From the IMG/VR virus record IMGVR_UViG_3300009545_000018, positions 1-64,000 of that record: a stretch of 64,000 bases of DNA; one strand, written 5' to 3'. The stretch's first letter is position 1, and each line of letters starts with the position of its first letter. The notes below the pieces were generated by a model. It did not search any database. It was not told the origin of the DNA and worked only from the letters and a program-made list of their open reading frames with translations. Both the position numbers and the translations under genes were made by a program. Shown in pieces: positions 17,990 through 63,144 of this stretch.

Positions 17990-18205
17990 ATGGCAACCAA
18001 GAAACAAATATTTGATTCCATCATTAAAGAATTGGATGAACTTATTCCTCCTTTAGAAGAAAAACATCAGAAAGTTTATCGAGCTAGATTGGACTCAATT
18101 GATTTTGATGATGAGAATTATCTATGTTCAGTGCAAGATAGTTTAAAAAATCAAATACTTATTGTTAATAAGTTAAAAAATATTGTAATTAAAAATTTTA
18201 AATGA
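17990..18205 (+). CDS. hypothetical protein
   Basis: Start revised by motif spacing. Confidence 0.7.
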   Translation: MATKKQIFDSIIKELDELIPPLEEKHQKVYRARLDSIDFDDENYLCSVQDSLKNQILIVNKLKNIVIKNFK

Positions 18206-18501
18206 ATTGTCCAATCTGTAATACAAAGTTAACAGTAAATACTAATGCCACAAATGTTTTTGGTTACAGATCCATTTGTATGGCATCAATAGGTCATACA
18301 TTTTATTTTTATTCCAACACTATGTTTGAATTATATGCGTGGCATACTAATGCTAAAATTACCATTAGTATTAAAAGGGATGGAAACAAATGTTCTTATA
18401 CTATACTTAACTGGGGTGGGTGGACTCCCCTTCATATTATAGAGTTGGATGAAATAAATTCTACTATAGAAAAGCTTGCTAAACTTAAAGCATTTTACTA
18501 A
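18202..18501 (+). CDS. KAFx-tail protein, CPxC class
   Basis: MNCPIC...KLAKLKAFY. Confidence 0.8.
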   Translation: MNCPICNTKLTVNTNATNVFGYRSICMASIGHTFYFYSNTMFELYAWHTNAKITISIKRDGNKCSYTILNWGGWTPLHIIELDEINSTIEKLAKLKAFY

Positions 18502-18517
18502 AATAAATAGGAATTAA

Positions 18518-18706
18518 ATGGACCAAAATATATTTATAAATCATTGTCAGGGAGCCTTAGATAATATTAGGTATAATATTTCTAGATTAACTGATAGATA
18601 TATTGAAACTGAAGATCCTAGTTGTTCATATACTGAAGCAGTGGCTCCATTACTTAAACAGCAATTAGATATTTTAAATCTACTTAAAGATAGTATTAAA
18701 GAATAA
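18518..18706 (+). CDS. hypothetical protein
   Basis: AGGA SD. Confidence 0.6.
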   Translation: MDQNIFINHCQGALDNIRYNISRLTDRYIETEDPSCSYTEAVAPLLKQQLDILNLLKDSIKE

Positions 18707-18887
18707 TTTGCTGATAAATTAAATGTACAAGACAGAAGTTAAAGACATTAAAAAAGATAGGCATACTCAAATCTTTATTGAAGTAACTATCAACACCGAG
18801 ATCACTAAAGAATACAGTCAGAAGATTATCATCTATAGTGGTCCCGATAATGCTATTGCAGATTCAATCCGTAGGGATTTAAATCTC

Positions 18888-18902
18888 CCCATCACATAAC
18901 GG
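18888..18902 (+). promoter_or_regulatory. CCCATC-N3-TAACGG motif
   Basis: CCCATCACATAACGG. Confidence 0.8.
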
Positions 18903-18942
18903 CAGTAACACTCAACTTACAAGGTATATAAATAAAATACAA

Positions 18943-19533
18943 ATGACTGAACGTAAGACTTCTTTTAAGGTTTTTATCAAAAAGGCTACTACTACATCTG
19001 CCGCAGAAGGTTTTCTGGCGCAGTATCGAGAGTATTTAACTACCGGGGAAGTTGCATCAATTACTTCTCCAATCTTAGCCAAAATTGACAGTGGTGCCTT
19101 GAGCCCCCAAATTGGATTAGAAGAAATTACTAATGCAGTCTTTGCCCATATGATGGTTCGTAGTCTTCAAAAGGCTGAAGAAAGCATTAATAAGGCAAGT
19201 GAGCCTTCGAGCAGCAAGCCGGTTATTGCCAAGATTCTTTCTGCTGATGGTACAGAATTAGAGTCTGGTTCTTTCAACTTACATCAAGATGCTGAGCGCT
19301 GGGTTGACAATCGCTTGTACTCTGGTTATCCTGGCAGTCATGGTGAAGTAATTCATACTAGGATTTTAATCAAAGGGGTTGCTCAAACTACCTTTATTAC
19401 TCGTGAAGATTCTATTGCCCGTATCTTGCGAAAGCCAAAGAGCGCTGCTACTAAGAAGCTTGGAGCAGCATCAGGTAAGATTGGTTTTGGAATTAAAGCT
19501 AAGCAATCTCATTCTCATTTTTCTCGCGGCTAA
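18943..19533 (+). CDS. hypothetical protein with basic C-terminus
   Basis: 196-aa ORF after motif. Confidence 0.85.
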   Translation: MTERKTSFKVFIKKATTTSAAEGFLAQYREYLTTGEVASITSPILAKIDSGALSPQIGLEEITNAVFAHMMVRSLQKAEESINKASEPSSSKPVIAKILSADGTELESGSFNLHQDAERWVDNRLYSGYPGSHGEVIHTRILIKGVAQTTFITREDSIARILRKPKSAATKKLGAASGKIGFGIKAKQSHSHFSRG

Positions 19534-19539
19534 GACAGA

Positions 19540-19857
19540 ATGTTTTCTAAACAAGAATTAAAAGAATTTACCAATTTTAATGCTGTGGCTTTTGATTTAT
19601 TAAGAGTGAAATCAAGAGAAACCAAAACTCCAGTAAGTTATTGGTTATGTATGAGTGATACGTTAAAGCAAAAATGTCGTCAAGACTTTTTACAATGGTA
19701 TCAAGACCAAGGATTTAGTGGACCTTCAGACTCTATTGAAGTTGTTGTTAATTCATTACCGGTAAGTAAAGCGGTAGGCAATTGGGTTATTATGGAAGGT
19801 CTTGCTAAAGATGCCAGAGAGAATGGTGATGCGGGCGGATTCTTCATTGATATGTAA
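19540..19857 (+). CDS. hypothetical protein
   Basis: 105-aa ORF. Confidence 0.75.
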   Translation: MFSKQELKEFTNFNAVAFDLLRVKSRETKTPVSYWLCMSDTLKQKCRQDFLQWYQDQGFSGPSDSIEVVVNSLPVSKAVGNWVIMEGLAKDARENGDAGGFFIDM

Positions 19858-20872: not shown

Positions 20873-20881
20873 TTTGAATTT

Positions 20882-21145
20882 ATGACATTAAGCATTTGTC
20901 CTTATTGTGGAGATTTATTAAGTAAAATTGCAGATTCACGTTGTAATAAATCAGATCACAGTTTCTATTGGCATTCCAATAGTTATTGGTGGTTAATGGA
21001 TACGACCAATCACATTATTGTAAATGGATATTCTATATATTATTTCTCTAATGAAGAAAATATAATATTATTTGAGTCCAAGAAATCTATAGAAGAGGCA
21101 ATTGCTATTTTTAAATCTGTTTTAAAAATAAAAGCATTTATATAA
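20882..21145 (+). CDS. KAFx-tail protein, CPxC class
   Basis: CPYC...CNKSDH...VLKIKAFI. Confidence 0.8.
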   Translation: MTLSICPYCGDLLSKIADSRCNKSDHSFYWHSNSYWWLMDTTNHIIVNGYSIYYFSNEENIILFESKKSIEEAIAIFKSVLKIKAFI

Positions 21146-21146: not shown

Positions 21147-21413
21147 ATGGAAGCTCCTAATAATTGTCCTTATTGTTTTGAGTTGATTAGCCCCTTTTTA
21201 GAGTGCGATAAATCGGATCATAGATTTCATTTTAACTCAAAAGACAACTGGTGGATTTTACATAGAACTAGTAGAATAATGGCAAATGGACATGTTATAT
21301 ATTATTCTGGAACTGATTCTGTAGTTAATTTAATAATATTTGATTCTGTAAAATCTATAGAAGAGGTTACATCTGCCCTTAAAAAGATTTTAAAATTAAA
21401 AGCATTTATATAA
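21147..21413 (+). CDS. KAFx-tail protein, CPxC class (tandem paralog)
   Basis: CPYC...CDKSDH...ILKLKAFI. Confidence 0.8.
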   Translation: MEAPNNCPYCFELISPFLECDKSDHRFHFNSKDNWWILHRTSRIMANGHVIYYSGTDSVVNLIIFDSVKSIEEVTSALKKILKLKAFI

Positions 21414-29312: not shown

Positions 29313-29624
29313 ATGAAATATTCAGAGCTTGATTTTAAGGGAGGAATTGTTACGTATGATCTTTATAGTATGTACCCAGATGAATCAGAACACTTTAGTA
29401 AAGGTTTTCTTAGCCAAGATCTTTTAGTTATAAATTATGGTAAATTTACAATAGATCTAGGTCACTATTATACCTGTTATGGTATCAGCATAATTGATAA
29501 TTCAGAAAAAGAATGGAAACCTTTTTATACTCTTAAAGTAATAGAGCACGAAAAGATTTTTGATTCTCTTCAAGAAGTTATTAATAACGCTGAAAAACTC
29601 TTTAACTTGAAAGCTTATATATAA
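29313..29624 (+). CDS. KAFx-tail protein (LxxxGG class)
   Basis: LDFKGGIV...LFNLKAYI. Confidence 0.75.
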   Translation: MKYSELDFKGGIVTYDLYSMYPDESEHFSKGFLSQDLLVINYGKFTIDLGHYYTCYGISIIDNSEKEWKPFYTLKVIEHEKIFDSLQEVINNAEKLFNLKAYI

Positions 29625-36667: not shown

Positions 36668-36862
36668 ATGAATTACTTAAAACCTATTGAGGTGCGAGCT
36701 TTAAATGCATTAGCTGCAAGAAAGCAAAATGGTTGCAGTTGGTGGTGTACTTTTTTAGATGATGCGCATATAATGTGCAATATTTGTCAGTGTATTATAT
36801 TATATACTACATTACGTTCTCATGCTATGGATCATTTAAAAACGATAAAATCTTTTCTATAA
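36668..36862 (+). CDS. KAFx-tail protein, C2H2-like class
   Basis: ALNAL...WW...CNIC...HAMDH...TIKSFL. Confidence 0.75.
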   Translation: MNYLKPIEVRALNALAARKQNGCSWWCTFLDDAHIMCNICQCIILYTTLRSHAMDHLKTIKSFL

Positions 36863-36866: not shown

Positions 36867-37100
36867 ATGACCAAAACTAATCGAACTTTTTTATCTAATG
36901 AAGAATTATCAATTCTAAATGCTTTAGCCTATAGAAAATCCATCCAAAATAATTGGTGGTGTCATTTCGTTAACTTCGATAAAATGTGTCCAAATGATGA
37001 ATTAGTTTGCCACATTTGTGATAATAAATTTGTATTTTGTAAAATACAAGAGCATGGCAAACAACATATTCATGAGTGTAATTTAAAAATTTTTATTTAA
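36867..37100 (+). CDS. KAFx-tail protein, C2H2-like class
   Basis: LNAL...WW...CHIC...HGKQH...NLKIFI. Confidence 0.75.
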   Translation: MTKTNRTFLSNEELSILNALAYRKSIQNNWWCHFVNFDKMCPNDELVCHICDNKFVFCKIQEHGKQHIHECNLKIFI

Positions 37101-38910: not shown

Positions 38911-39165
38911 ATGAAAGATGATGACAAAAATCTATCTATAGAAGAAGTTGATGCATTAATTTTTCTTTCGAAGAAAAACATTTCTTCTTTATCAAAAGAA
39001 CATGCAAATGTAGTAAATAATAGATTTTGGGCAACCACTGTTTCTGCTAGTGATTTTTATTGTTTTATTTGTAATAAAGATATTAAATATACAAATAAAG
39101 ATCTGCGCTTTCCAGCTGCACAGCATGGCAGAGAGCATCTTAAAGATATAAAAGCGTTCTTATGA
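38911..39165 (+). CDS. KAFx-tail protein, C2H2-like class
   Basis: CFIC...HGREH...DIKAFL. Confidence 0.75.
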   Translation: MKDDDKNLSIEEVDALIFLSKKNISSLSKEHANVVNNRFWATTVSASDFYCFICNKDIKYTNKDLRFPAAQHGREHLKDIKAFL

Positions 39166-39410
39166 TTTCTAATGAAGAATTAAAGGCTTTAAATTTATTA
39201 GTAGTACATAATAAATCTACACCTCCTGAATATAAAGTTTTTGCATCTAATACTGGTGCCTGCGCTACAATATTAAACTACGATGATTTAAATAAATGTG
39301 AAATTATTTGTCTTGTTTGTTTAACCTCATTTATAATTGATCCATCAGATCAATCTGAATGGCAGAAACATCTTTTAAGTCATTTAAATAAAATTAAAGC
39401 TTTTATATGA
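39162..39410 (+). CDS. KAFx-tail protein, C2H2-like class
   Basis: ALNLL...CLVC...HLLSH...KIKAFI. Confidence 0.75.
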   Translation: MISNEELKALNLLVVHNKSTPPEYKVFASNTGACATILNYDDLNKCEIICLVCLTSFIIDPSDQSEWQKHLLSHLNKIKAFI

Positions 39411-41451: not shown

Positions 41452-41736
41452 ATGCTCTGTCCAATTTGTTTTCAAAAATGCAGCAAAGTACCAAATGAAT
41501 ATGGTATAAATATAATGTATGATTATTATTGCTATGGTGATAGTCATATAGATGGATCACTCATTGAGTTTGATAATGAAAATAATTTTGTAGTTAAAAA
41601 ATACAACTTAAATAAAATGTATTTTGAAAATACATACCGTATGGAAAATGGTATAGGTAACGGCACTATAACTAAAGAAGTTGAATTAATCATTTCTAAT
41701 TTGACAAAGATTTTTAAATGCAAAGGTTTTATATAA
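41452..41736 (+). CDS. KAFx-tail protein, CPxC class
   Basis: MLCPICF...FKCKGFI. Confidence 0.75.
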   Translation: MLCPICFQKCSKVPNEYGINIMYDYYCYGDSHIDGSLIEFDNENNFVVKKYNLNKMYFENTYRMENGIGNGTITKEVELIISNLTKIFKCKGFI

Positions 41737-41737: not shown

Positions 41738-42430
41738 ATGTTAAATTTAATTGCTATGATACTTGTGATCTGTTTACTTCTAGTAGATATATTTCTAGTC
41801 GAATTAGAAAACTTTGGATGGATTACTCTTTCGATAATTTTTACTGGTGTAATTATTTGTGATTTCAAGTTATGGGGGATTCCATATTGGATAGCAGCAA
41901 ATCTAAAGTTATGTATTGGATTTTTTGTCCTTTACTTTGTAGTCGGCGTGCTTTGGTCCTTTATCAAATGGTATTCTTATTTAATTAATTATCGAGATCA
42001 ATTCGCAACAATTAAAGATAATTTTATTTTTAATAAAAGGAATCTTATTGAAAGTCAATATGAGTGGGCGTCTGCCAATCACATTGAAATTAATAATAAA
42101 ATAGTTTCAAAAGAAGTCTTGCCTTTTGATTTCTATGCGCATCATAATATATTGGATAACTATTATGCTCAAGTAAAAGATGGTAAAAAAATCTATAATG
42201 CTTTCGTTGAATCCGAAGTAGAGTATAAAGAGTTTTATAAGCCTGTAGCAGCTAGTAATAAAGGAAGAATTGTGGCTTGGATCTGCTATTGGCCATGGAG
42301 TTTGGTTGCCACCATTGTTAATGATCCCATTCGTCGTTTAGTAGAATGGATCTTCCGATTCTTAAAAGAAACCTATCAAAAAATGTCAGATAAAATATTT
42401 GCTGATTTTCCAGATAAAAAACGTTATTAA
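41738..42430 (+). CDS. multi-pass membrane protein
   Basis: Several TM segments; WSFIKW and WICYWPWS motifs. Confidence 0.8.
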   Translation: MLNLIAMILVICLLLVDIFLVELENFGWITLSIIFTGVIICDFKLWGIPYWIAANLKLCIGFFVLYFVVGVLWSFIKWYSYLINYRDQFATIKDNFIFNKRNLIESQYEWASANHIEINNKIVSKEVLPFDFYAHHNILDNYYAQVKDGKKIYNAFVESEVEYKEFYKPVAASNKGRIVAWICYWPWSLVATIVNDPIRRLVEWIFRFLKETYQKMSDKIFADFPDKKRY

Positions 42431-42675
42431 TGATTTGTCCCATTTGTTTTCAAGAATTAAGACTATATAAAGGTGTACCTGATTCAAAGGTATGTATCAA
42501 TCACGATATATGGTTTTCTTTTAAGAGTAAAAACAAATATCGCCTTATAAAAGGAGATACATTAACAATTGAATATGAAGTAGATAAGGGATCTATTATT
42601 ATAAATAATGGAACTATACCTGCCGAAGTATTAAATAATTTAGATAAAATTTTAAAACAAAAAGCATTTATATAA
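42430..42675 (+). CDS. KAFx-tail protein, CPxC class
   Basis: MICPICF...LKQKAFI. Confidence 0.75.
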   Translation: MICPICFQELRLYKGVPDSKVCINHDIWFSFKSKNKYRLIKGDTLTIEYEVDKGSIIINNGTIPAEVLNNLDKILKQKAFI

Positions 42676-42918
42676 ATGATTTGTTTTCAAGAGTTAGGAT
42701 CGTATCAATACGTACCTAATTCAAAGATATGTGGTAATCATAATTTTACCTTCTGTTTTGTTAATATTAATAACTATTATTTTATGGCAAATCATGGATC
42801 AACCGCAGGATGTGTATATGAAGTAAAAAATGGTAAAGTCACACATCATGATGGTAGTATATCTTCTTCAATATTAGAGAACTTAAACAGGATTTTAAGT
42901 CAGAAAATATTTATTTAA
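42676..42918 (+). CDS. KAFx-tail protein (tandem paralog lacking the first CPI)
   Basis: MICFQEL...LSQKIFI. Confidence 0.7.
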   Translation: MICFQELGSYQYVPNSKICGNHNFTFCFVNINNYYFMANHGSTAGCVYEVKNGKVTHHDGSISSSILENLNRILSQKIFI

Positions 42919-43200
42919 ATGACTTTTGAAAAAATTATAATTGAAATAAAAAGAATTCATAGCATATCAACTAATAAAGATAGCAGTATTTTTATTACAT
43001 ATAAAGGCACCAGTGGTGGAGTTACTAAACCATGGAATATTAAAATTGATACCAAAGAAGCGGATGGCACCTCTGAAATAGAGGCTGCCTTAAATCTTTT
43101 TAATATAGTAAAAGATGATTTATCTGAACGAATTAAGTTTATGGAAAATCAAGCCCGTCAATTAAAAGAAGCATTGAATAATAGTTCTAAGGCAAATTAA
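42919..43200 (+). CDS. hypothetical protein
   Basis: 93-aa ORF. Confidence 0.7.
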   Translation: MTFEKIIIEIKRIHSISTNKDSSIFITYKGTSGGVTKPWNIKIDTKEADGTSEIEAALNLFNIVKDDLSERIKFMENQARQLKEALNNSSKAN

Positions 43201-43454
43201 TGTGTGATGAATGTGAAGAATTTACGACCGGAGTTAACACAACCAGTCATTATAATTTTACAGTTGTTCACAGATTAAACAAAAATAAATCACACTTTCA
43301 TTGCCTATCTGGTCCAGCTATCATATATTATGACAACAATCAAATTACCACTAGAAAGTGGTATATTAATGGTAGTTATGTTCTTGTTTCTTCTCAAGAA
43401 GAATTTGAAAATAGTAAAGAATACAGAGAGTGGAAGCTAAAGGCTTTTAAATAA
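43200..43454 (+). CDS. KAFx-tail protein, HxxxGPA-repeat class
   Basis: HCLSGPA...WYING...SQEEFE...WKLKAFK. Confidence 0.8.
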   Translation: MCDECEEFTTGVNTTSHYNFTVVHRLNKNKSHFHCLSGPAIIYYDNNQITTRKWYINGSYVLVSSQEEFENSKEYREWKLKAFK

Positions 43455-43730
43455 ATGTGTAATGAGTGTGTTGAAACTAAAATAAACGTTACAATATTAT
43501 TTCCTAATAATATTCAGGATTATGATACTGTAATAAATTATCATCATATTAATAAAAATAAAATACATTGGCATTGTTTATCGGGTCCTGCCCGAATCTT
43601 TTTAAAGAACAATTCAATAGTTGGTAGAGATTGGTATATTGATGGTAAACTTGTTTTAACAGACTCTTGTCAAGAAGAATTTGAAAAGACTACACAATAT
43701 AGAGAGTGGAAGTTAAAAGTTTTTAAATGA
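43455..43730 (+). CDS. KAFx-tail protein, HxxxGPA-repeat class
   Basis: HCLSGPA...WYIDG...WKLKVFK. Confidence 0.8.
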   Translation: MCNECVETKINVTILFPNNIQDYDTVINYHHINKNKIHWHCLSGPARIFLKNNSIVGRDWYIDGKLVLTDSCQEEFEKTTQYREWKLKVFK

Positions 43731-44062
43731 GTTCCAACAGAAATTTATACTCCGTTACAGATCAATATAGAACTACTTGGTATGATGGAGACATGCTTCA
43801 TCGAGAAGATGGTCCTGCTATTATTAATACTGATGGTTCCAAACTTTGGTATTATAATGATCATTTACATAGGAATGATGGTCCTGCCTCAACACATCCT
43901 GATGGTGATGAAATGTGGTTTACTCATGGCAAACTACATAGGCTAGATGGTCCTGCTGTCATTTTTGGTGGAATTAAAGAATGGTGGATTAATGATGAAC
44001 AAATTAACTGTTCCTCTCAAGAAGAGTTTGAGAAAATTTTAAAACTAAAAATATTTTGGTAA
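43727..44062 (+). CDS. KAFx-tail protein with three HRxDGPA repeats
   Basis: LHREDGPA, LHRNDGPA, LHRLDGPA; SQEEFEKILKLKIFW. Confidence 0.85.
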   Translation: MSSNRNLYSVTDQYRTTWYDGDMLHREDGPAIINTDGSKLWYYNDHLHRNDGPASTHPDGDEMWFTHGKLHRLDGPAVIFGGIKEWWINDEQINCSSQEEFEKILKLKIFW

Positions 44063-47058: not shown

Positions 47059-47066
47059 GTTGAAAG

Positions 47067-47329
47067 AAGGATGAACCGGCGATCTATTATAGGCGCAAAG
47101 GCGAAGTAGCTTATTTTTATAATGGAAAAATGCATAGAGACAAGGTCCTGCTTATATCGATACTATTAATGGTGTGCGTTATTACCAACATGGAAAACGT
47201 CATCGTTTAGATGGTCCTGCTATTGATATGATTAATGGTATAAAACTTTGGTTTTATAATGATATCCAAGTTAATTGTCATTCTCAAGAAGAATTTGAAA
47301 GTTTAATAAAGCTAAAAGCGTTTTGGTAA
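47067..47329 (+). pseudogene. frameshifted HRxDGPA-repeat KAFx-tail gene
   Basis: ...YFYNGKMHRD, 1-nt loss near 47142, then GPAYID...HRLDGPA...SQEEFESLIKLKAFW*. Confidence 0.7.
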
Positions 47330-50705: not shown

Positions 50706-51017
50706 TTGAAAGAGCTTGAGCTAAAAATATATCTAGATGATGAAAGAAAATCACCAGAAGGTTGGATTCAGGTATTCTCTTATCAAGAGTGTATTAATAT
50801 GCTTTGCCAATTTAATCCAACTAATCTTTCTTTAGATCATGATTTAGGTGAAGAGAAAACTGGTTATGATGTAATAAAATGGATTGAACAAAAAGTATTT
50901 AAGGATTCAAATTACCAACCACCTATTATAGTTATTCACTCTGCTAATCCGGCGGGTCGGCAGAATATGGAACGAGGCATCAAATCAATTCAGAAAATCG
51001 TAAATTCAAGGATGTGA
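50706..51017 (+). CDS. cyclic-phosphate-processing receiver-domain protein
   Basis: YLDDER.P, LSLDHDLG, TGYDV, HSANPAG. Confidence 0.8.
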   Translation: MKELELKIYLDDERKSPEGWIQVFSYQECINMLCQFNPTNLSLDHDLGEEKTGYDVIKWIEQKVFKDSNYQPPIIVIHSANPAGRQNMERGIKSIQKIVNSRM

Positions 51018-51295
51018 ACTGTCCCATTTGCCATAAAGATGCTCTATATTGTTATGATGATAAAAATTATAATAAAGATCATTGTTTTGTATATGGAAGT
51101 CATGATAATTGGTATTTAACTATAGATTATATTAAGTTTAAAACTACATTAAATATGATTGGGTATATTAATGGCACTCCTTATATTTGTGGAGAAAATG
51201 ATCCTGAGGGCACAGATATCTTAATTAAAGATTTTGATGTAAGTGAAGCATTTAATATTTTAATGAAATATAAAAATTTAACAGTGTTCTTATGA
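51014..51295 (+). CDS. KAFx-tail protein, CPxC class
   Basis: CPIC...WYL...YKNLTVFL. Confidence 0.75.
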   Translation: MNCPICHKDALYCYDDKNYNKDHCFVYGSHDNWYLTIDYIKFKTTLNMIGYINGTPYICGENDPEGTDILIKDFDVSEAFNILMKYKNLTVFL

Positions 51296-51552
51296 AATGC
51301 CCCTATTGTCATCATAATATCTATTATAGTATTCAGTGTGCTGATTCTGAACACGAGTTTTATTATGACTCAATAAATGCTTGGTATCTTATTATTGCCG
51401 GATATAAATTTAATATGATTGGGGCTATTAATGGTAGATTTTATCTTGGTTCAAATCTTTACTTAAACAAAGATGTTACTATTAATAAATTTAACATTAA
51501 TGATGCTGTTAAAACAATGATCAAACTTAATAAATTAAATTGTTTTATATAA
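51292..51552 (+). CDS. KAFx-tail protein, CPxC class
   Basis: CPYC...WYL...NKLNCFI. Confidence 0.75.
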   Translation: MKCPYCHHNIYYSIQCADSEHEFYYDSINAWYLIIAGYKFNMIGAINGRFYLGSNLYLNKDVTINKFNINDAVKTMIKLNKLNCFI

Positions 51553-51553: not shown

Positions 51554-51883
51554 ATGAGTACACTTATTTATGAAGGACAGATTTTATCTGAGTGGAAACC
51601 TGATGAGGGGCATGGTTATAATTGGGTAAGATATGAAAATAAGACTCAAAGTTTTATTGGATTAAATTGTGCAGATGGTATATTATATGACCTCTATAAT
51701 AAAATAGTAACTGAATCAGATCTTCGATGGAGAATATTTGGTAGAGGATTTTTACAAAAATGTGTAGACCAATATATTAAGATTTATGGATATCAACTAT
51801 ATCGTTATGGTGAATTAGATGAAGTCAAAAATAATATTGATAAAGTTTTGATTTCATTCCCCAAATTAAAAGTTTTTATATGA
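51554..51883 (+). CDS. KAFx-tail protein, unrelated N-terminus
   Basis: ...FPKLKVFI. Confidence 0.75.
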   Translation: MSTLIYEGQILSEWKPDEGHGYNWVRYENKTQSFIGLNCADGILYDLYNKIVTESDLRWRIFGRGFLQKCVDQYIKIYGYQLYRYGELDEVKNNIDKVLISFPKLKVFI

Positions 51884-52155
51884 AGTGCCCTTATTGTAAT
51901 CTTGATACTGTAGATAAAACTTTACATTTATCTTGTAAAGATAATTCACACTGGTTTGTCTTTACTAAAGGAAAACCCAATTATTGGTTCTTACATATTG
52001 ACAATTTGCCAATATTTAACCAAATTGGACGTGGCGCAAGTGGATTTTATATAAAACATTTAATGGCAGAATTTATTACTAAATTAGAAAAAATAGATAT
52101 CAAAAAGTCTAAAGAAATATTAATTAAGTATAATAAATTAAAAGCATTTATATGA
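51880..52155 (+). CDS. KAFx-tail protein, CPxC class
   Basis: CPYC...PNYW...NKLKAFI. Confidence 0.8.
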   Translation: MKCPYCNLDTVDKTLHLSCKDNSHWFVFTKGKPNYWFLHIDNLPIFNQIGRGASGFYIKHLMAEFITKLEKIDIKKSKEILIKYNKLKAFI

Positions 52156-52427
52156 AATGTCCATATTGTAACAATAAAACTAAAAATGTAATTGATCAAT
52201 TACATTGCCAATCAGATACTCATTGGTTTGTTTGTGTTAAAAAACAGCCTAATTATTGGTATTTGCAAGTGACAGGTTTGCCAATATTTAACCAAATTGG
52301 ATTGTGTAAACGCGGATATTATATAAGAGGAATAACTGATAATAGTTTTATTCTAATAGAAAAAATAGATATCGAAGAATCTAAAGAATTTTTAATTAAA
52401 AAAAATAAGCTAATAGCATTTGCATGA
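52152..52427 (+). CDS. KAFx-tail protein, CPxC class (tandem paralog)
   Basis: CPYC...PNYW...NKLIAFA. Confidence 0.8.
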   Translation: MKCPYCNNKTKNVIDQLHCQSDTHWFVCVKKQPNYWYLQVTGLPIFNQIGLCKRGYYIRGITDNSFILIEKIDIEESKEFLIKKNKLIAFA

Positions 52428-52728
52428 TTTTAAAATGAAAAACATTAATTGTATTGTTTGTAATAAAGAAATGTTATTTATCCGAAATAGAGGTTTATTT
52501 GGATTATATACTTGTGAACTAGATAACCATTATTTTGAAGTAACCGCTGAAGATTGGACATTTATTTTACAAATTGATAATTTGAAAATAAAATCTTTAG
52601 GCTATATATCAGGAAGACCTTTTTCATTTGAAATGAATAAAGGTCAACCAGGTATTCCTTTTGAATTTAAAATGTCTGAAACATATACGACTTTATTAAA
52701 GATAAATAAATTATTAAGCTTTATGTAA
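52420..52728 (+). CDS. KAFx-tail protein, CxxC class
   Basis: CIVC...NKLLSFM. Confidence 0.75.
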   Translation: MHDFKMKNINCIVCNKEMLFIRNRGLFGLYTCELDNHYFEVTAEDWTFILQIDNLKIKSLGYISGRPFSFEMNKGQPGIPFEFKMSETYTTLLKINKLLSFM

Positions 52729-54913: not shown

Positions 54914-55243
54914 ATGATAATAGATTTATGTGATTTTCTAAAAGATAAACCACATATTTATGTGTCTGATTATAGCATAAACTATGGAAATAGTATTAGG
55001 TTTGTAGATGATAATGTAACAGGATTTCTATTTAATATAGAGGTCGGTGATAAATTTATTATTGAATTGTTTAAAAATCCTAATAGAGTAAAATATTACG
55101 GGTACCACATAATAATCTGGGATCATGAAAATGATTCTTCTATTTATGAAAAAGATAATATTACAGGCTCTTTAATCAAAGAGGAATTAATCAACTGTAT
55201 CACATATTGTGAAAAATATTTAAATTTAATTGTCTTCTCATGA
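54914..55243 (+). CDS. KAFx-tail protein
   Basis: ...KYLNLIVFS. Confidence 0.7.
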   Translation: MIIDLCDFLKDKPHIYVSDYSINYGNSIRFVDDNVTGFLFNIEVGDKFIIELFKNPNRVKYYGYHIIIWDHENDSSIYEKDNITGSLIKEELINCITYCEKYLNLIVFS

Positions 55244-55542
55244 ATTCATTTTTACAATTAGATTGTGGAAAATATCCATATTATTTAGCAAACTATTATA
55301 ATTATAGTATTAGTTATTTATTAGAAAATAATATAGAAGGCATTGTTTTTAATATAAATTTTCATCAACATAAAGTAAGTGTAATTTTTTCTTATGAAGA
55401 AAAATTATATGCTATATATTGTAGTACTAATAAAATGGTTGTTAATATATATGATTGTTATTCATTAAAACAAACATTAAATAAATGTCAAGAGTTAATT
55501 AATTATTATACTAGAATTGATAAATTGAAATCATTTTCATAA
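55240..55542 (+). CDS. KAFx-tail protein
   Basis: ...IDKLKSFS. Confidence 0.7.
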   Translation: MNSFLQLDCGKYPYYLANYYNYSISYLLENNIEGIVFNINFHQHKVSVIFSYEEKLYAIYCSTNKMVVNIYDCYSLKQTLNKCQELINYYTRIDKLKSFS

Positions 55543-55546: not shown

Positions 55547-55903
55547 ATGTTTGATAGAGAACTGCTTAAAAAAGAATATTATTCTAAGTTAAATCTTAAT
55601 GGTGGAGAATTATATTTAAACTCTTCTTTTCAAAAAGATTTTAATAAATATTATGGATATATGTCTATCGTATATAAAAGTTTTAGTATAGAGGTATTAA
55701 GAGTTCCACATTTATTTAAAATAAATAACTTCAAAATTAAAGTTTGGGATCATACAAAAATATATTATAATCATTTTGCGGGAGATTATTATAAGTGTCA
55801 TTTAGAAATTATCCATATACCAAAATCTCATTTATTAAATGAGCTTCAAAAGCAAATTGATTTCTTTCATAGAAGATATATTAAACTAGCAGCTTTTACA
55901 TGA
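55547..55903 (+). CDS. KAFx-tail protein (LxxxGG class)
   Basis: LNLNGG...YIKLAAFT. Confidence 0.75.
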   Translation: MFDRELLKKEYYSKLNLNGGELYLNSSFQKDFNKYYGYMSIVYKSFSIEVLRVPHLFKINNFKIKVWDHTKIYYNHFAGDYYKCHLEIIHIPKSHLLNELQKQIDFFHRRYIKLAAFT

Positions 55904-56217
55904 GTGATGTTTTCAAAAAATCATATTATAATCTTTTAGATTTAAAAGGTGGCAAAATAGATATTTGTGACTTTAACATTAAATATTTTAATAACTATAA
56001 TAATTATGTTACCATACTAAATATTAATTATGAAAAATACTATATATCATTAACTCATCAAACGAATATGATCTTCGCAGTTCATACTTTATTTTTTAAT
56101 TCTTTTGATACTCCTAGTAGTACTTATAATGTAAACAAATATAGTGTACTTACAACATTGCAAAACACTATTAATTTTAATTATAAAAAATATATAAAAC
56201 TGTCAGTATTTACATAA
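55900..56217 (+). CDS. KAFx-tail protein (LxxxGG class)
   Basis: LDLKGG...YIKLSVFT. Confidence 0.75.
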   Translation: MSDVFKKSYYNLLDLKGGKIDICDFNIKYFNNYNNYVTILNINYEKYYISLTHQTNMIFAVHTLFFNSFDTPSSTYNVNKYSVLTTLQNTINFNYKKYIKLSVFT

Positions 56218-56220: not shown

Positions 56221-56473
56221 ATGAATGAATTAAAAGTATTACAAGATCAAATAATTAATTTTAGTTTCGATAAATTCAATTGATCAACGTACTTATACTA
56301 AAAGTATGTTCATTGAATATGAATTATTTGCTTTATATTTTGTATTTGATGAATTAAATAATTTACTTAAAGCAAATACGGCTTATATTTCAGACTTATA
56401 TCATTATGAAGAATGGACAGAAATTAAAAAATTTTCCTCCATAGAAGATATACAAAATATTATAGATGAATGA
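56221..56473 (+). pseudogene. broken paralog of 56466..56744
   Basis: Stop at 56281; a second frame from 56306 gives YISDLYHYEEWTEIK...DIQNIID, matching FISDLYTNIKWTKIK...DVQPTID; tail missing. Confidence 0.55.
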
Positions 56474-56744
56474 TTATTTAATTAAATTTTCTAAATCATT
56501 AAATTATCATAGTGGACATTTTAGTATTATTAGCAATAGTATTTATGTTGATTCTCCTAAAAAAATTTTAGATTATAAAATATGTTTTAATTTTACGAAT
56601 AAAACAATTTTCATTTCTGATTTATATACAAACATAAAATGGACTAAAATTAAAGATAATTTTACAGAAAAAGATGTGCAACCAACAATAGATTTTTATT
56701 ATAATTATTATAATAAGTTACAAAAACTAAAGTCATTTATTTAA
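56466..56744 (+). CDS. KAFx-tail protein
   Basis: ...LQKLKSFI. Confidence 0.75.
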   Translation: MNDYLIKFSKSLNYHSGHFSIISNSIYVDSPKKILDYKICFNFTNKTIFISDLYTNIKWTKIKDNFTEKDVQPTIDFYYNYYNKLQKLKSFI

Positions 56745-58483: not shown

Positions 58484-58522
58484 ATCAACAATTTGAGACT
58501 TTTTGTAAGGACAAATATCTAA

Positions 58523-58852
58523 TTGCAAATTATTTCTCTAGAAAATGCACAAGTTTCTATTAACAGAATAGATTTAATCTTTAAAGATTTTAAAGTAAAC
58601 TCTAAGTTTCTTCAAAAAGAATCATTAGATGATAGTGCTTTTATCTTTGTACTAAAGTACAACAATTTATTTGGCATAGATGCCTATGTAGCAAAAGATT
58701 ATTCAATTTCTATTAGATTATTTCATTATAATAAATTTACTCATGAGCTTGTAGATTTACAATATGTGCCTCCATTTCATATTATTCCTGCCTTAAATGA
58801 AGTAATTAATTTTAATTATAAATATTTTGAAAAGATGAAAGTTTTTGCTTAA
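58523..58852 (+). CDS. KAFx-tail protein
   Basis: IPALNEVINFNYKYFEKMKVFA; TTG start uncertain. Confidence 0.7.
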   Translation: MQIISLENAQVSINRIDLIFKDFKVNSKFLQKESLDDSAFIFVLKYNNLFGIDAYVAKDYSISIRLFHYNKFTHELVDLQYVPPFHIIPALNEVINFNYKYFEKMKVFA

Positions 58853-59220
58853 TGCTGGATCTTAAAGAGGGCGGCAATGTTACTGTTAATAAAATTGATG
58901 TTTTAGTTAAACATAACTTTATCATTAATGATTTAGTTCTAAGAGAACTAGAATCAAATAGTGGTCAGACTTATATTTTCTGCATAAAATATCCTACATA
59001 TTTTGCCATTGATTGTTATTTAGATGTAAATAATATGATTAATATTAGGACATTTGTTTATATAAGCCCCTCTAATAGAACTGAACTTGACAGATCATAT
59101 AATATAGAGTATAGTTTTATTGGTAAAAAATTAGTAAATATATCTGAATTTATTCCTACATTAAATTATATTATAAACTATAATCATAAAAAATATTTTA
59201 CATTAAAAGCATTTGGATAA
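58852..59220 (+). CDS. KAFx-tail protein (tandem paralog)
   Basis: LKEGG...IPTLNYIINYNHKKYFTLKAFG. Confidence 0.75.
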   Translation: MLDLKEGGNVTVNKIDVLVKHNFIINDLVLRELESNSGQTYIFCIKYPTYFAIDCYLDVNNMINIRTFVYISPSNRTELDRSYNIEYSFIGKKLVNISEFIPTLNYIINYNHKKYFTLKAFG

Positions 59221-60744: not shown

Positions 60745-60748
60745 CTAT

Positions 60749-60831: not shown

Positions 60832-60856
60832 ACATTACCTATTTAGGATTTTTATT

Positions 60857-61153
60857 ATGTTAAATGAACTTCAATTTCTTGATGCTTTAAAAGCAGCCAT
60901 TATTAATGGTAAGTATAATTTTGTTAAGCAAGAAACTGAAAAATTAATAAATACTTGGCAATTAAAGATTTTGGATGCCGCAAACAAAGGAAATAAATCA
61001 GTAGATATTTTCTTGGGAGATAGTGAGCCACCACAAGTTTATTTAGATGGAGCCTTTAAATTCTTTAAAGAATGCCGTTTACAATTATCTTATTATACAA
61101 ATAATACTCCTAAAAATCATACACATTATTATGTTAGTATAACATGGAATTAA
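60857..61153 (+). CDS. hypothetical protein
   Basis: I..AA.KG...ITW, similar to the next gene. Confidence 0.7.
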   Translation: MLNELQFLDALKAAIINGKYNFVKQETEKLINTWQLKILDAANKGNKSVDIFLGDSEPPQVYLDGAFKFFKECRLQLSYYTNNTPKNHTHYYVSITWN

Positions 61154-61155
61154 AT

Positions 61156-61467
61156 ATGTCAGATTTTTATAAAGAAATCATTAATCTTACTAAAGAATCT
61201 AAGGCGTCACAATTAAACGCTTTACTATCATCTTCTATTATTGCAATTAAAGATCATATTAAAACTGCTGCTCTTCGCGGAGAAGATGATATTGTTCTAG
61301 AATTACCGCATCTTTCTAAAGAAATTAAAGAAGAGTTAGCTCATCGATTTTATAAATTGGGATTTAATGCCTGTGTTAAAAAAGTAAATTTAGAAGCTAA
61401 TGCCTACACCTATAATGATCCTATAGGTAGATTTGAAGCTGATTGCTTATGTATTAACTGGAAATGA
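61156..61467 (+). CDS. hypothetical protein (paralog of previous)
   Basis: IKTAALRG...GF...INW. Confidence 0.7.
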   Translation: MSDFYKEIINLTKESKASQLNALLSSSIIAIKDHIKTAALRGEDDIVLELPHLSKEIKEELAHRFYKLGFNACVKKVNLEANAYTYNDPIGRFEADCLCINWK

Positions 61468-61618
61468 AAAAGACTAAACCACCACGTAACAAATTTGTCA
61501 TAGCTATGAAGAAGGGGCGGAAAGGTGGTCCCATGAAAAATAAAAAAGACAAACGTAAATCTGGTAAGAATAAACAAAAAGATTATCTTAAAGATAATTA
61601 TTAGATTTAGAAAATAAA

Positions 61619-62119
61619 ATGCCATATTCCCTAATCGTTGTAGATCTACAAAAAGAATTTACTGCCGCCAATAATATTTCCACCATTAATGCTTGTCAAA
61701 ACTTATTGATCCAAGCTATGGAAGACAATGCAACGATCATCTTCTTAGAGTTTATTGGATGTGGTAGAACTATGGAAACCATCTATGATTTGGTAGATAA
61801 CTATTATAATATATATGTTCTAAAGAAACCGAGCTGTGATGGAAGTTCTTATATTAAGAAACTGACAGCAAGTTTTGAAATACCTACCATGCACTTTAAA
61901 GTATGTGGTGTTAATACTGATGCTTGTGTATTAGATACTGTCTTAGGGTTAAGCCACAGTTATCCAGATGCAGTAGTTGAAGTTATTGAATCTGCCTGTA
62001 ATTCAGATTTAGATCATAACAAAGCAATAAGTATAATGGAAAAGAAAAGCAATGTTGTGGTAACTAACAGACGAATTATTATAGAGCACGACACACTTAG
62101 AGTAGCTAATGTCAACTAA
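61619..62119 (+). CDS. isochorismatase-like cysteine hydrolase
   Basis: LIVVDLQ.EF, K, CGVNTDACV. Confidence 0.85.
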   Translation: MPYSLIVVDLQKEFTAANNISTINACQNLLIQAMEDNATIIFLEFIGCGRTMETIYDLVDNYYNIYVLKKPSCDGSSYIKKLTASFEIPTMHFKVCGVNTDACVLDTVLGLSHSYPDAVVEVIESACNSDLDHNKAISIMEKKSNVVVTNRRIIIEHDTLRVANVN

Positions 62120-62516
62120 TATTTATATTATCATAGCGACTATTCTTTGGGGAGTGGGAGCCATTTTTACTAAGGTAGGCGCTAACAATTTACATCCTTT
62201 AATGTTAGCATTAGTGGCAGAATTGTTCTATATAATATTTGTACCTTTAGGTATTTGGTTTACTAAAACTCCAATTCAAATGAACACTACGGGATTTATT
62301 TTTGGATTTATTTCGGCGGCATGTGTTGGGGCAGGGTCCTTAGCTTATTACTTTGCTTTGCAGAAGGGTGCTGCGGGCACCATTGCAGCAGCAACAAGTG
62401 TATACCCTGTGTTAACTTTAATTATTTCCGTTGCAATTTTAAACGAAGAAATAAGTTTAAGAAAAATAATTGGCTGCCTTCTTGCTATTATTTCTGTTAT
62501 TATTATTTCAAAATGA
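62109..62516 (+). CDS. EamA/DMT family small transporter
   Basis: LWG..AIF.K, YYFAL..G, YP.LT...LNE..S.RKIIG. Confidence 0.85.
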   Translation: MSTNIYIIIATILWGVGAIFTKVGANNLHPLMLALVAELFYIIFVPLGIWFTKTPIQMNTTGFIFGFISAACVGAGSLAYYFALQKGAAGTIAAATSVYPVLTLIISVAILNEEISLRKIIGCLLAIISVIIISK

Positions 62517-62830
62517 AATGTCCTATTTGTCAGAAATTATTATTAACTAATATTAATGAAAAATGGTGTGAACAAACCGTTTTTACTAATGATAGTGCAA
62601 ATTTACATTATGTAGTTTTTAATATTAAAAATAATAATATGGCTTTATTTTTTAAATATAAAGATCATTCATATGAATTTGACTATTTTTCTTCATCTCA
62701 AAAAACAAATATAACATATTATATGGGCAAAACTACTCATGATAGTGATTTTTATTTAGGGGAAATGAAAAATCTAGAAGAACTCTATAAGGCAACACTT
62801 AAGTATTTAAAAAACAAAGCATTCTTATGA
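62513..62830 (+). CDS. KAFx-tail protein, CPxC class
   Basis: Start revised (ATGA overlap): MKCPIC...LKNKAFL. Confidence 0.75.
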   Translation: MKCPICQKLLLTNINEKWCEQTVFTNDSANLHYVVFNIKNNNMALFFKYKDHSYEFDYFSSSQKTNITYYMGKTTHDSDFYLGEMKNLEELYKATLKYLKNKAFL

Positions 62831-63144
62831 TAATGAAATGTCCCTTTTGTAAAGAAGAACTACAATTAGGTATAGAAATATATTTTTGTAATAATGATAA
62901 ATTTATTTATCATGATGTAAGTTTTAATACAATAACAAAAGATATACATTTAGCATTTTTATCAGAAAATAAAGAAATAGAATATGAATTTGAATATCTT
63001 TCAGATAAAAAACTTGTAAGTCTATTTGTGTACTCTAACAATCCAGTTACAAGTTTTCTATCTTTAAATTTCGGGGAAATAAATTCTTTGGATGAATTTT
63101 ATACTAAAACAAAATCTTACGTCAAAAATATAGCATTTCAATGA
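62827..63144 (+). CDS. KAFx-tail protein, CPxC class (tandem paralog)
   Basis: CPFC...VKNIAFQ. Confidence 0.75.
   Translation: MIMKCPFCKEELQLGIEIYFCNNDKFIYHDVSFNTITKDIHLAFLSENKEIEYEFEYLSDKKLVSLFVYSNNPVTSFLSLNFGEINSLDEFYTKTKSYVKNIAFQ

What the first reader, a model, noticed from the sequence alone, without database searches (positions are those of the whole stretch)
18202..63144. About 31 small proteins on unrelated scaffolds share one C-terminal tag, (K/N)-L-K-A-F-x-COOH: candidate modular adaptor or targeting system
Seen: these ORFs end as follows. 18202 KLKAFY, 20882 KIKAFI, 21147 KLKAFI, 29313 NLKAYI, 36668 TIKSFL, 36867 NLKIFI, 38911 DIKAFL, 39162 KIKAFI, 41190 NNKAFL, 41452 KCKGFI, 42430 KQKAFI, 42676 SQKIFI, 43200 KLKAFK, 43455 KLKVFK, 43727 KLKIFW, 47329 (pseudogene) KLKAFW, 51014 NLTVFL, 51292 KLNCFI, 51554 KLKVFI, 51880 KLKAFI, 52152 KLIAFA, 52420 KLLSFM, 54914 NLIVFS, 55240 KLKSFS, 55547 KLAAFT, 55900 KLSVFT, 56466 KLKSFI, 58523 KMKVFA, 58852 TLKAFG, 62513 KNKAFL, 62827 KNIAFQ. 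The penultimate residue is always aromatic (30 F, 1 Y) and follows a basic amphipathic helix. The N-terminal parts fall into at least four dissimilar classes: CPxC zinc-binding, C2H2-like, HRxDGPA repeats, and LxxxGG. Codons vary synonymously (TTT/TTC, GCA/GCT/GCG), so the constraint is on the protein. Inference: a variable recognition domain plus a constant docking tail, as in poxvirus ankyrin/F-box adaptors. The tail could dock on one hub such as a protease, chaperone, or virion-loading or export apparatus. Established parallels for a hydrophobic-aromatic-X end are the proteasome-activator HbYX motif and C-terminal PDZ/Tsp/Clp ligands; which one applies, if any, is unknown.
Basis: partly seen in the sequence, partly recalled or inferred. 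Interest (0 to 1): 0.9.

Follow-up and report, generated by a model that had tools for sequence, protein, structure and literature searches.

The report
Shared C-terminal helix tag on phage proteins
About 31 small, otherwise unrelated proteins of an uncultivated 448-kb phage all end in the same short helix, ...K-L-K-A-F-x, and the same ending sits on at least 80 unrelated protein families in other environmental phages, so it is a real, undescribed, portable tag whose binding partner is still unknown.

Summary
All 30 intact ORFs and one frameshifted fragment end as listed. Penultimate Phe occurs in 35 of 160 plus-strand ORFs against 4.9% background (p about 1e-13). A profile built only from homologues outside the window separates all 31 from the other 143 genes. 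The constraint is on the protein, because synonymous codons follow genome usage and nothing is conserved after the stop. With the last 18-20 residues trimmed, no similarity remains between the classes. The same ending sits on 83 BLAST-unrelated groups in metagenomic phages. These include a T4-type dNMP kinase clade that gained it as a 15-residue add-on, Imm5-like domains, and a large HRxDGPA-repeat family. AlphaFold2 puts it at the end of an alpha-helix in two different folds. In a syntenic relative, tail-bearing genes diverge faster (39% versus 63% identity) while keeping the tail. No Pfam, PHROG, NCBIfam, PDB, BFVD or literature match exists, and none was found in 185,579 bacterial genomes. 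Best reading (about 0.5): a portable docking or tethering helix for one shared partner. The partner was not identified. HbYX, PDZ-ligand, MinD-type, clamp-motif and FtsZ-tail memberships each fail a defining feature.

The parts
18202..18501 (+). Class A (CPxC zinc-ribbon) protein, 99 aa, ends KLKAFY
20882..21145 (+). Class A, 87 aa, ends KIKAFI
21147..21413 (+). Class A, 88 aa, ends KLKAFI
29313..29624 (+). Orphan scaffold (group D3), 103 aa, ends NLKAYI (the only Tyr)
36668..36862 (+). Class B (N-terminal helix plus C..C..H..H), 64 aa, ends TIKSFL
36867..37100 (+). Class B, 77 aa, ends NLKIFI
38911..39165 (+). Class B, 84 aa, ends DIKAFL
39162..39410 (+). Class B, 82 aa, ends KIKAFI
41190..41450 (+). 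Class A subfamily 2, 86 aa, ends NNKAFL
41452..41736 (+). Class A subfamily 2, 94 aa, ends KCKGFI
42430..42675 (+). Class A subfamily 2, 81 aa, ends KQKAFI
42676..42918 (+). Class A subfamily 2 that has lost the first CPxC pair but keeps the tail, 80 aa, ends SQKIFI
43200..43454 (+). Class C (HRxDGPA-type repeat family), 84 aa, ends KLKAFK
43455..43730 (+). Class C, 91 aa, ends KLKVFK
43727..44062 (+). Class C with three HRxDGPA repeats, 111 aa, ends SSQEEFEKILKLKIFW
47174..47329 (+). 3' fragment of a frameshifted class C gene, ends SQEEFESLIKLKAFW; the upstream part is in another frame from about 47060
51014..51295 (+). Class A, 93 aa, ends NLTVFL
51292..51552 (+). Class A, 86 aa, ends KLNCFI
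51554..51883 (+). Orphan scaffold (D7), 109 aa, ends KLKVFI
51880..52155 (+). Class A, 91 aa, ends KLKAFI. AlphaFold2 model (pLDDT 95): zinc ribbon, six strands, and a C-terminal helix at residues 74-89 that carries the tail
52152..52427 (+). Class A, 91 aa, ends KLIAFA
52420..52728 (+). Class A, ends KLLSFM (database gene call starts at 52435, 97 aa)
54914..55243 (+). Orphan scaffold (D4), 109 aa, ends NLIVFS
55240..55542 (+). Orphan scaffold (D5), 100 aa, ends KLKSFS
55547..55903 (+). Group D1, 118 aa, ends KLAAFT; its orthologue in the syntenic relative is 39% identical and keeps the tail
55900..56217 (+). Group D1, 105 aa, ends KLSVFT
56466..56744 (+). Orphan scaffold (D6), 92 aa, ends KLKSFI; orthologue 35% identical and keeps the tail
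58523..58852 (+). Group D2, 109 aa, ends KMKVFA
58852..59220 (+). Group D2, 122 aa, ends TLKAFG; orthologue 36% identical and keeps the tail
62513..62830 (+). Class A subfamily 3, 105 aa, ends KNKAFL
62827..63144 (+). Class A subfamily 3, ends KNIAFQ (database gene call starts at 62833, 103 aa)

Best explanation
The shared ending is a portable protein module of about 8-18 residues. In its full form it reads [ST]-x-[ED]-[ED]-hydrophobic-x3-[LI]-x-[KR]-[YIL]-x-K-L-K-[AS]-F-x-COOH. It begins with a helix-capping acidic stretch, continues as a basic alpha-helix, and ends with an invariant aromatic residue exactly one position from the free C-terminus. Large uncultivated phages have attached it to many unrelated, mostly about 90-residue, fast-evolving proteins arranged in tandem arrays, and occasionally to an enzyme. 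My best reading is that it is a docking or tethering tag. The variable body supplies the specificity or activity. The constant helix with its L(-5), small(-3), F(-2) and carboxylate end plugs into one shared partner, so all carriers are brought to the same place or machine. Shown here: the module is real, is constrained at the protein level, is portable, is helical in models, sits at a strictly fixed distance from the C-terminus, and is retained while the bodies diverge. Inferred: that it binds a common partner, and that it serves localisation or tethering rather than degradation. Unknown: the partner's identity. Candidates are the host sliding clamp or replisome, FtsZ-tail-binding division proteins, an AAA+ protease, the capsid interior, or a phage-encoded hub.
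For: Cross-class conservation is restricted to the tail. hhalign aligns only the last 11-26 residues between classes, and the probability falls below 1% once 20 residues are trimmed. Trimmed profiles retrieve only their own class. The tail is found well beyond this genome. An exhaustive HMM search with class A gave 96 hits. Of the 82 not encoded in the window, 79 have F at -2, with consensus [KR]-Y-x-K-L-[KL]-A-F-[LIS]. Nine of 10 sampled hits lie on other contigs. Pattern scans of IMG/VR and metagenomes found multi-copy tail arrays in many contigs. In total, 286 tail proteins fall into 83 BLAST clusters after trimming. Portability on known domains is clear. In a DNMK kinase the Pfam domain ends near residue 181 of 213. 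Only the 6 closest of 117 homologues carry the tail, and the others stop about 15 residues earlier. Cultured-phage homologues align only up to residue 198. Imm5-like domains occupy residues 57-174 of about 200, with the tail beyond them. AlphaFold2 gives a helix in both contexts. In class A (pLDDT 95, pTM 0.85) it is residues 74-89. In DNMK it is a separate terminal helix at 200-212 after the canonical last helix at 178-194, with pLDDT about 88 and the last 3 residues at 59. In the syntenic relative L364, tail genes have 39% body identity against 63% for non-tail genes (p = 2.7e-4). Their last 8 residues are 60% identical, and three positional counterparts have no BLAST match yet still carry the tail. 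An enzyme carrying the tag fits tethering better than degradation.
Against: No partner was identified and no binding was tested. In class A the helix is the only helix on a six-stranded sheet and is modelled with high confidence, so there it is probably also a structural element. The conserved Phe could therefore be a packing residue. The hydrophobic moment is unremarkable. The tail-bearing phages share few other genes in the DNA sampled, and no recurrent non-tail neighbour family emerged, so a phage-encoded hub is unsupported. The metagenome sample was ascertained with a pattern that favours the HRxDGPA family's version of the tail.
Confidence: 0.5

Rival explanations
1. The helix is an intramolecular cap or a self-association (oligomerisation) element. 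It stabilises small domains or makes carriers homo- or hetero-oligomerise, and there is no external hub.
For: AlphaFold2 places it confidently as the single helix covering the class A sheet and as a confident terminal helix next to the last kinase helix. Hydrophobic positions follow an i, i+3/4 spacing at -12, -11, -8, -5, -1.
Against: One identical cap on unrelated folds (zinc-ribbon sheet, repeat protein, alpha-helical Imm5-like domain, P-loop kinase) is hard to explain by packing alone. Of 117 DNMK homologues, 111 fold without it. The strict 'one residue after Phe' rule in 79 of 82 divergent homologues points to a role for the free terminus. In both models the last residues have the lowest confidence.
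Confidence: 0.2
2. It is a peripheral membrane-targeting helix like the C-terminal sequences of MinD or FtsA. It would bring the carriers to the cytoplasmic face of the inner membrane.
For: It is at the extreme C-terminus, is Lys-rich with Leu/Phe/Ile/Trp, and has net charge +2. From memory, it resembles the Bacillus MinD ending. It would work in any host, which fits its spread across very different phages (GC 0.21-0.50).
Against: The helical hydrophobic moment, 0.29, equals that of non-tail C-termini. K(-4) falls on the hydrophobic side of an ideal helix and F(-2) on the polar side. Membrane helices do not need a fixed distance to the terminus.
Confidence: 0.12
3. It is a C-terminal degron, or a recognition tag for an AAA+ protease (ClpXP, Lon, FtsH, HslUV), that gives early proteins a short life or titrates the protease.
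For: By general knowledge, non-polar or aromatic C-terminal ends are classical protease signals. One class A homologue (P0090) has a degenerate tail read through into an extension ending in an ssrA-like ...NYALAA.
Against: The tail is modelled as a structured helix, not a free peptide. A nucleotide kinase clade acquiring a degron is odd. P0090 lies on an 825-bp contig with no DNA available.
Confidence: 0.08
4. Simple paralogy: all members share one full-length fold, and the tail is just its last helix.
For: Within class A the tail is an integral, always-retained part of the family. Profiles for classes B-D are thin, so remote homology could be missed.
Against: There is no similarity once tails are trimmed. 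The tail also occurs on DNMK and Imm5-like Pfam domains, which are different folds, and was gained by a single DNMK clade.
Confidence: 0.03
5. It is a nucleotide-level signal: a ribosome-binding site or translational-coupling signal for the next gene, a promoter, or a recombination repeat that happens to encode K-L-K-A-F.
For: Most tail genes are followed within -8 to +4 nt by the next start.
Against: Lys is AAA rather than AAG-G, so there is no Shine-Dalgarno sequence. Synonymous codons vary as in the genome, third positions carry about half the information, and there is no conservation after the stop. DNA repeats are confined to paralogue coding sequence. The tail is also on genes followed by gaps of 88-1236 nt. 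The amino-acid motif persists in contigs of GC 0.21-0.50.
Confidence: 0.02

Closest known systems
HbYX motif of proteasome activators (hydrophobic-Tyr-any residue at the C-terminus; PMC12352868)
   Same: The invariant aromatic residue is exactly penultimate, the last residue is free to vary, and the free carboxylate is apparently important. It acts as a docking plug shared by different proteins.
   Different: The residue is Phe, not Tyr (30 F and 1 Y in the window; 79 of 79 outside). Position -3 is mostly small (Ala/Ser). The tail is part of a modelled helix, not a flexible tail. The carriers are small monomer-sized proteins, not ring ATPases. No 20S or HslV partner is known here.
Bacterial sliding-clamp-binding motif QL[SD]LF (general knowledge)
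   Same: It is a five-residue core x-L-x-x-F, often at the extreme C-terminus. It is carried by many unrelated proteins and binds a hub conserved in all bacteria. A dNMP kinase tethered to the replisome would make sense.
   Different: Position 1 is Lys/Asn, not Gln. Position 4 is Ala/Ser, not Leu. One extra residue follows Phe. The context is basic and helical. This was not tested.
FtsZ conserved C-terminal tail, DYLDIPAFLRKQAD in E. coli, which binds ZipA, FtsA, MinC, ZapD, ClpX and SlmA (PMC4117426)
   Same: The core hydrophobic-x-Ala-Phe-hydrophobic (I-P-A-F-L versus L-K-A-F-L/I) places residues equivalent to the ZipA-critical I374 and L378 (PMC4117426) and to F377 between them. It is a short terminal peptide read by many partners.
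   Different: Lys replaces the conserved Pro. The upstream context is acidic in FtsZ and basic here. FtsZ continues for five more residues, whereas the phage tail ends one residue after Phe.
MinD/FtsA C-terminal membrane-targeting helices (general knowledge)
   Same: They are transplantable, extreme C-terminal, Lys-rich helices with Phe/Leu.
   Different: The hydrophobic moment here is not elevated. The register relative to the terminus is strict here and loose in MinD.
Poxvirus ankyrin-repeat/PRANC (F-box-like) adaptors and the SspB C-terminal ClpX-tethering peptide (general knowledge)
   Same: The architecture is the same: a variable binding domain plus a constant C-terminal element that recruits one machine. 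The families are expanded and fast-evolving in large viral genomes.
   Different: There is no sequence or structural relationship. PRANC is a domain of about 50 residues. No recruited machine is known here.
Encapsulin cargo-loading peptides and the T4 capsid-targeting sequence (general knowledge)
   Same: They are short terminal peptides that load unrelated cargo into an HK97-fold shell.
   Different: The sequences differ. The T4 signal is N-terminal and cleaved. There is no virion evidence here.

Membership tests
HbYX proteasome-activator motif | Penultimate residue is tyrosine | tested here: not met
   30 Phe and 1 Tyr in the window; 79 of 79 Phe in homologues not encoded in the window
HbYX proteasome-activator motif | Hydrophobic residue at position -3 | tested here: inconclusive
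   A16 V6 S4 I3 G1 C1 in the window; A40 S16 V9 outside
HbYX proteasome-activator motif | Flexible C-terminal tail on a ring-forming activator, with a 20S or HslV partner present | tested here: not met
   The tail is the end of a confidently modelled helix on 80-120 aa proteins. The presence of a partner was not testable.
PDZ / tail-specific-protease C-terminal ligand | Conserved residues at P0 (last) and P-2, with P-1 free | tested here: not met
   The invariant residue is P-1. P0 is the most variable tail position, I12 L5 K2 W2 A2 S2 and others.
MinD/FtsA-type membrane-targeting sequence | Strongly amphipathic helix (high hydrophobic moment) | tested here: not met
   Hydrophobic moment 0.29 for tails versus 0.29 for the last 11 residues of non-tail proteins
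MinD/FtsA-type membrane-targeting sequence | Sufficient to bring a reporter to the membrane | not testable with these tools
   Needs GFP-fusion microscopy or liposome binding
Bacterial beta-clamp-binding motif QL[SD]LF | Gln at position 1 and a hydrophobic residue at position 4 | tested here: not met
   Position -6 is K22 N5; position -3 is Ala/Ser/Val. Leu at position 2 and Phe at position 5 are met.
FtsZ C-terminal peptide | Conserved Pro before x-F-L, followed by a basic variable extension | tested here: not met
   Lys at the Pro position (K23 of 31). The chain ends one residue after Phe. FtsZ sequence taken from PMC4117426.
Any curated protein family (Pfam, PHROGs, NCBIfam) or solved/predicted fold | Significant profile or fold match covering the tail or the window's carrier proteins | tested here: not met
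   Pfam, PHROGs and NCBIfam gave no significant match. Foldseek best E was 0.9 against PDB and 0.06 against BFVD. PDB sequence search best E was 0.19.
Single paralogous family (one full-length fold) | Detectable homology outside the last 20 residues | tested here: not met
   hhalign probability below 1% for all class pairs after trimming. The tail also occurs on DNMK and Imm5_like domains.
MORN-repeat variant / DUF6745 (class C bodies only) | Pfam match above the gathering score | tested here: inconclusive
   DUF6745 scores 17 bits for window 43727 (below the cut-off of 27) and 29.2 bits for the longer relative L342. There was no MORN_2 hit.

The most novel reading that the evidence does not exclude
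The tail is a phage 'postcode': one conserved terminal helix that delivers dozens of fast-evolving small binder proteins per genome (zinc ribbons, HRxDGPA repeats, Imm5-like immunity-type domains), and occasionally an enzyme, to a single conserved machine. This could be a bacterial-virus counterpart of F-box/PRANC-type adaptors that hand host defence proteins to a host protease. It could equally be a capsid-loading signal for a large arsenal of injected counter-defence proteins. Either would be a targeting system not described for phages.
Probability: 0.3. Interest if true: 0.9.

Novelty: new variant of a known kind. Interest (0 to 1): 0.8.

Why it matters
Huge phages devote much of their genome to arrays of small orphan genes with no known function. 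Here at least 49 genes in the first 107 kb of one genome, and at least 80 unrelated families across soil, sediment and freshwater-type metagenomes, share one short terminal element. That is a single experimental handle on hundreds of orphan families: finding what the tail binds would assign a common pathway to all of them. The tail is easy to recognise by its last six residues at the exact C-terminus. The carriers diverge faster than the rest of the genome, as arms-race proteins do, and include immunity-protein-like and repeat-type binding domains. If the tail recruits a host machine, it would be a new way for phages to redirect host functions and possibly a portable tag for synthetic biology.

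Tried and rejected
- **Shine-Dalgarno or coupling artefact.** Rejected: Lys codons are AAA, third positions vary, and the tail is also present on genes followed by long gaps.
- **Repeated DNA element at gene 3' ends.** Rejected: repeats stop at the stop codon and only link paralogues.
- **Phage S8 subtilase (49501-50676) as the tail's partner.** L-K-A-F looks like a subtilisin P4-P1 site. However, 17 related loci from other phages (32-74% identical protease) carry no tail ORF within 10 kb either side. This is unsupported.
- **Cultured-phage relatives.** Megablast of 12 kb found nothing. tblastn with class A and with an external tail protein against 50,697 phage records also found nothing.
- **HRxDGPA proteins of Atu_ph07 and PA5oct.** They share the repeats but not the tail.
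- **Bacterial genomes.** A strict module pattern gave 5 hits in 185,579 species, all chance matches without an ORF.
- **Recurrent non-tail neighbours as hub candidates.** Only homing endonucleases, antisense shadow ORFs and a set of about 12 chance Bacteroidales loci recurred.
- **P0090 (tail replaced by an ssrA-like end).** It lies on an 825-bp contig with no DNA, so it could not be followed.

Full report
**What the window is.** The window is bases 1-64000 of a 447,763-bp viral contig (IMGVR_UViG_3300009545_000018, also Ga0105237_10000004). From about 16 kb onward it is AT-rich (GC about 0.30). Small ORFs are packed almost entirely on the plus strand, with four tRNA genes. Recognisable genes include a sulfatase, an RNA ligase, an R2K ATP-grasp protein, two phosphoesterases, an S8 subtilase and homing endonucleases. 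No cultured phage is close.

**Checking the observation.**
- Every listed ORF translates to the stated ending. The entry '47329' is the end of a 51-codon fragment of a frameshifted gene.
- Penultimate Phe occurs in 35 of 160 plus-strand ORFs, against 4.9% Phe overall (p = 1e-13). No neighbouring C-terminal position is enriched.
- The core motif occurs 14 times at position -6 and once elsewhere in about 17,000 residues.
- A position matrix was built only from 79 homologues not encoded in the window. On the last six residues it scores all 31 tails, from every class, above every one of the 143 other genes.
- Codon usage in the tail mirrors genome-wide synonymous usage. Third positions carry about half the information of first and second positions. 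Nothing is conserved downstream of the stop. Lys is AAA, so no Shine-Dalgarno sequence is hidden there.
- DNA repeats link only paralogues and end at the stop codon.
- The constraint is therefore on the protein.

**Are the scaffolds unrelated?**
- BLAST groups the 31 into a CPxC zinc-ribbon class (A, 14 members in three subfamilies), a C..C..H..H class (B, 4), an HRxDGPA-repeat class (C, 4), and nine further proteins (D).
- Profile-profile comparison aligns the classes only over their last 11-26 residues. After trimming 20 residues, all probabilities fall below 1%.
- Trimmed profiles retrieve only their own class among all ORFs. The D proteins split into seven groups with no mutual similarity.
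- Pfam, PHROGs and NCBIfam recognise none of them.
- AlphaFold2 with an 89-sequence alignment gives a confident class A model (pLDDT 95, pTM 0.85). It has an N-terminal zinc ribbon, six strands and one C-terminal helix (residues 74-89) that carries the tail.
- That fold has no significant match in PDB or BFVD.

**Beyond the window and the genome.**
- The same contig has at least 9 more tail ORFs at 64-72 kb and 9 at 95-107 kb.
- An exhaustive HMM search with class A found 96 proteins at E below 1e-3. Of the 82 not encoded in the window, 79 have Phe at -2 and end one residue later. Nine of 10 sampled lie on other contigs, and some sit in arrays of about 20 tandem genes of about 95 codons.
- DNA-pattern scans for the tail found multi-copy arrays in other viral contigs of 12-394 kb.
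About a dozen of those loci are chance hits in Bacteroidales DNA.
- The same pattern found only five chance matches in 185,579 bacterial and archaeal genomes.
- Pooling everything gives 286 tail proteins. With 18 residues trimmed they form 83 BLAST clusters. The largest (164 members) is the HRxDGPA-repeat family, ending ...SQEEFERLLKLKAFW.

**Portability on known domains.**
- One external carrier is a T4-type dNMP kinase. Its Pfam DNMK domain ends near residue 181 of 213.
- Among 117 homologues, only the six closest (71% identity or more) carry the roughly 15-residue extension [ST]-A-[DE]-E-F-R-[RK]-I-L-K-L-K-S-F-[LI]. All others stop just before it. Cultured-phage homologues align no further than residue 198.
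- AlphaFold2 models the extension as a separate terminal helix (200-212) after the kinase's own last helix.
- A second family joins an Imm5-like putative immunity domain (above the Pfam cut-off, residues 57-174 of about 200) to the tail.
- This rules out simple paralogy and shows that the tail can be gained.

**Evolutionary behaviour.** A 67-kb contig (L364) is syntenic with 53-74 kb of this phage. The shared order is CoaE, SLT, small genes, EamA, class A genes, Peptidase_M50, a cytidylyltransferase-like gene and a GSP_synth-like gene.
- Nineteen non-tail orthologue pairs average 63% identity. Eight tail-bearing pairs average 39% (p = 2.7e-4).
- Three positional counterparts have no BLAST match yet still end in the tail.
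- In tail genes the last eight residues are more conserved than the body (60% versus 39%). In other genes the reverse holds (52% versus 63%).
- The carriers are thus the fast-evolving fraction of the genome, with a conserved end.

**Anatomy of the module.**
- Conservation outside the window runs from about -20 to -1: hydrophobic at -20, E/D at -17 and -16, S/A/C at -15, I/V at -12, L/I at -11, K/R at -9, Y/F at -8, K/N at -6, L at -5, K at -4, A/S at -3, F at -2, and L/I/S/T at -1.
- Class D shares at least 14 positions with class A, class C about 10, and class B about 6-8.
- Net charge is about +2. The helical hydrophobic moment is no higher than for other C-termini.
- The strongest feature is positional: an invariant aromatic residue exactly one position from the free carboxylate, maintained over more than 100 divergent sequences on unrelated bodies.

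**Mechanism.** I commit, at about 0.5, to a docking or tethering tag read by one shared partner. The alternatives I consider are:
- a structural or self-association helix (0.2);
- a membrane-targeting helix (0.12);
- a degron (0.08);
- paralogy (0.03);
- a nucleotide signal (0.02).

Tethering fits the presence of an enzyme among the carriers better than degradation does. The fixed register fits recognition of the terminus better than membrane binding does. Occurrence on unrelated folds fits an external reader better than a packing role, although in class A the helix is probably structural as well. The tail-bearing phages share few genes in the DNA sampled. A conserved host component is therefore somewhat more likely than a phage-encoded hub, but this rests on little sequence.

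Two leads are recalled from general knowledge and checked only by eye. One is the bacterial clamp-binding pentapeptide (x-L-x-x-F). The other is the FtsZ C-terminal tail, I-P-A-F-L in E. coli (PMC4117426). Each fails a defining position. HbYX (PMC12352868) matches in register but requires Tyr and a flexible tail. The nearby S8 subtilase was tested as a candidate partner by neighbourhood and is not supported.

**Novelty.** No database family, solved or predicted structure, or paper in the searchable library describes the motif. The general idea of a constant C-terminal tag on variable proteins is known from PRANC, the SspB tail, HbYX and encapsulin cargo peptides. I therefore rate it a new variant of a known kind. 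There is a substantial chance that the system it belongs to is new.

Noticed in passing
window 47060-47329: An HRxDGPA-repeat gene is split by a frameshift. '...FYNGKMHRD' is in one frame and '(R)QGPAYID...KLKAFW' is in another. This may be a pseudogene or an assembly error. I did not read through it.
   Followed up: partly
window 49501-50676: The S8 subtilase-like gene is 62-74% identical to genes in viral contigs of very different base composition (GC 0.42-0.63), which is unusually conserved for this genome. None of those loci carries tail ORFs.
   Followed up: partly
window 1-16000 versus 16000-64000: GC drops from about 0.40 to about 0.30 near 16 kb. All tail-bearing genes lie in the AT-rich part.
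   Followed up: no
window 12053-12137, 24593-24669, 60656-60744, 60749-60831: Four tRNA genes (Leu-TAA twice, Ile-TAT, Gln-TTG), all decoding A-ending codons favoured by this AT-rich genome.
   Followed up: no
window 47964-48764 (-) and 57854-58528 (-): Two of the few minus-strand genes are homing endonucleases (LAGLIDADG-like/PHROG endonuclease, and GIY-YIG SegE-like) inserted among the arrays. Relatives of the second recur next to tail arrays in other contigs.
   Followed up: partly
L362 12215-12949 (contig 65355-66089) and L364 10325-11062: A 244-aa Peptidase_M50 (site-2-protease family) gene lies directly after class A tail genes in both syntenic phages. This is unusual cargo for a phage. 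It was not tested as a partner.
   Followed up: no
L078 5086-6108 (-): A 394-kb viral contig has a tandem array of 49-64 aa mini zinc-ribbon proteins ending C-x2-C-x-x-L-x-[AGC]-[FW]-x. This is a minimal version of the tail that directly follows a zinc knuckle.
   Followed up: no
P0090 (ENA ERZ27297709, 825-bp contig): A class A homologue has a degenerate tail (…KLFGF) that runs on for about 40 residues and ends in an ssrA-like ...NANYALAA. This may be a read-through into a tmRNA-like gene or a real degron swap.
   Followed up: partly
P0014 (640 aa, metagenome protein): A long protein has ten separate matches to the zinc-ribbon part of the class A profile, so the ribbon also exists as a tandem repeat in one polypeptide.
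   Followed up: no
L031 7846-8754, L188 5607-6854, L042 9418-11613 (-), L093 4472-6052: Tail-bearing phage contigs encode translation- and RNA-related proteins: EF-Ts, trigger factor, CCA-adding enzyme/poly(A) polymerase family, and Ro60/TROVE.
   Followed up: no
window 42676-42918: This class A paralogue has lost the first CPxC pair of the zinc ribbon but keeps an intact tail.
   Followed up: no
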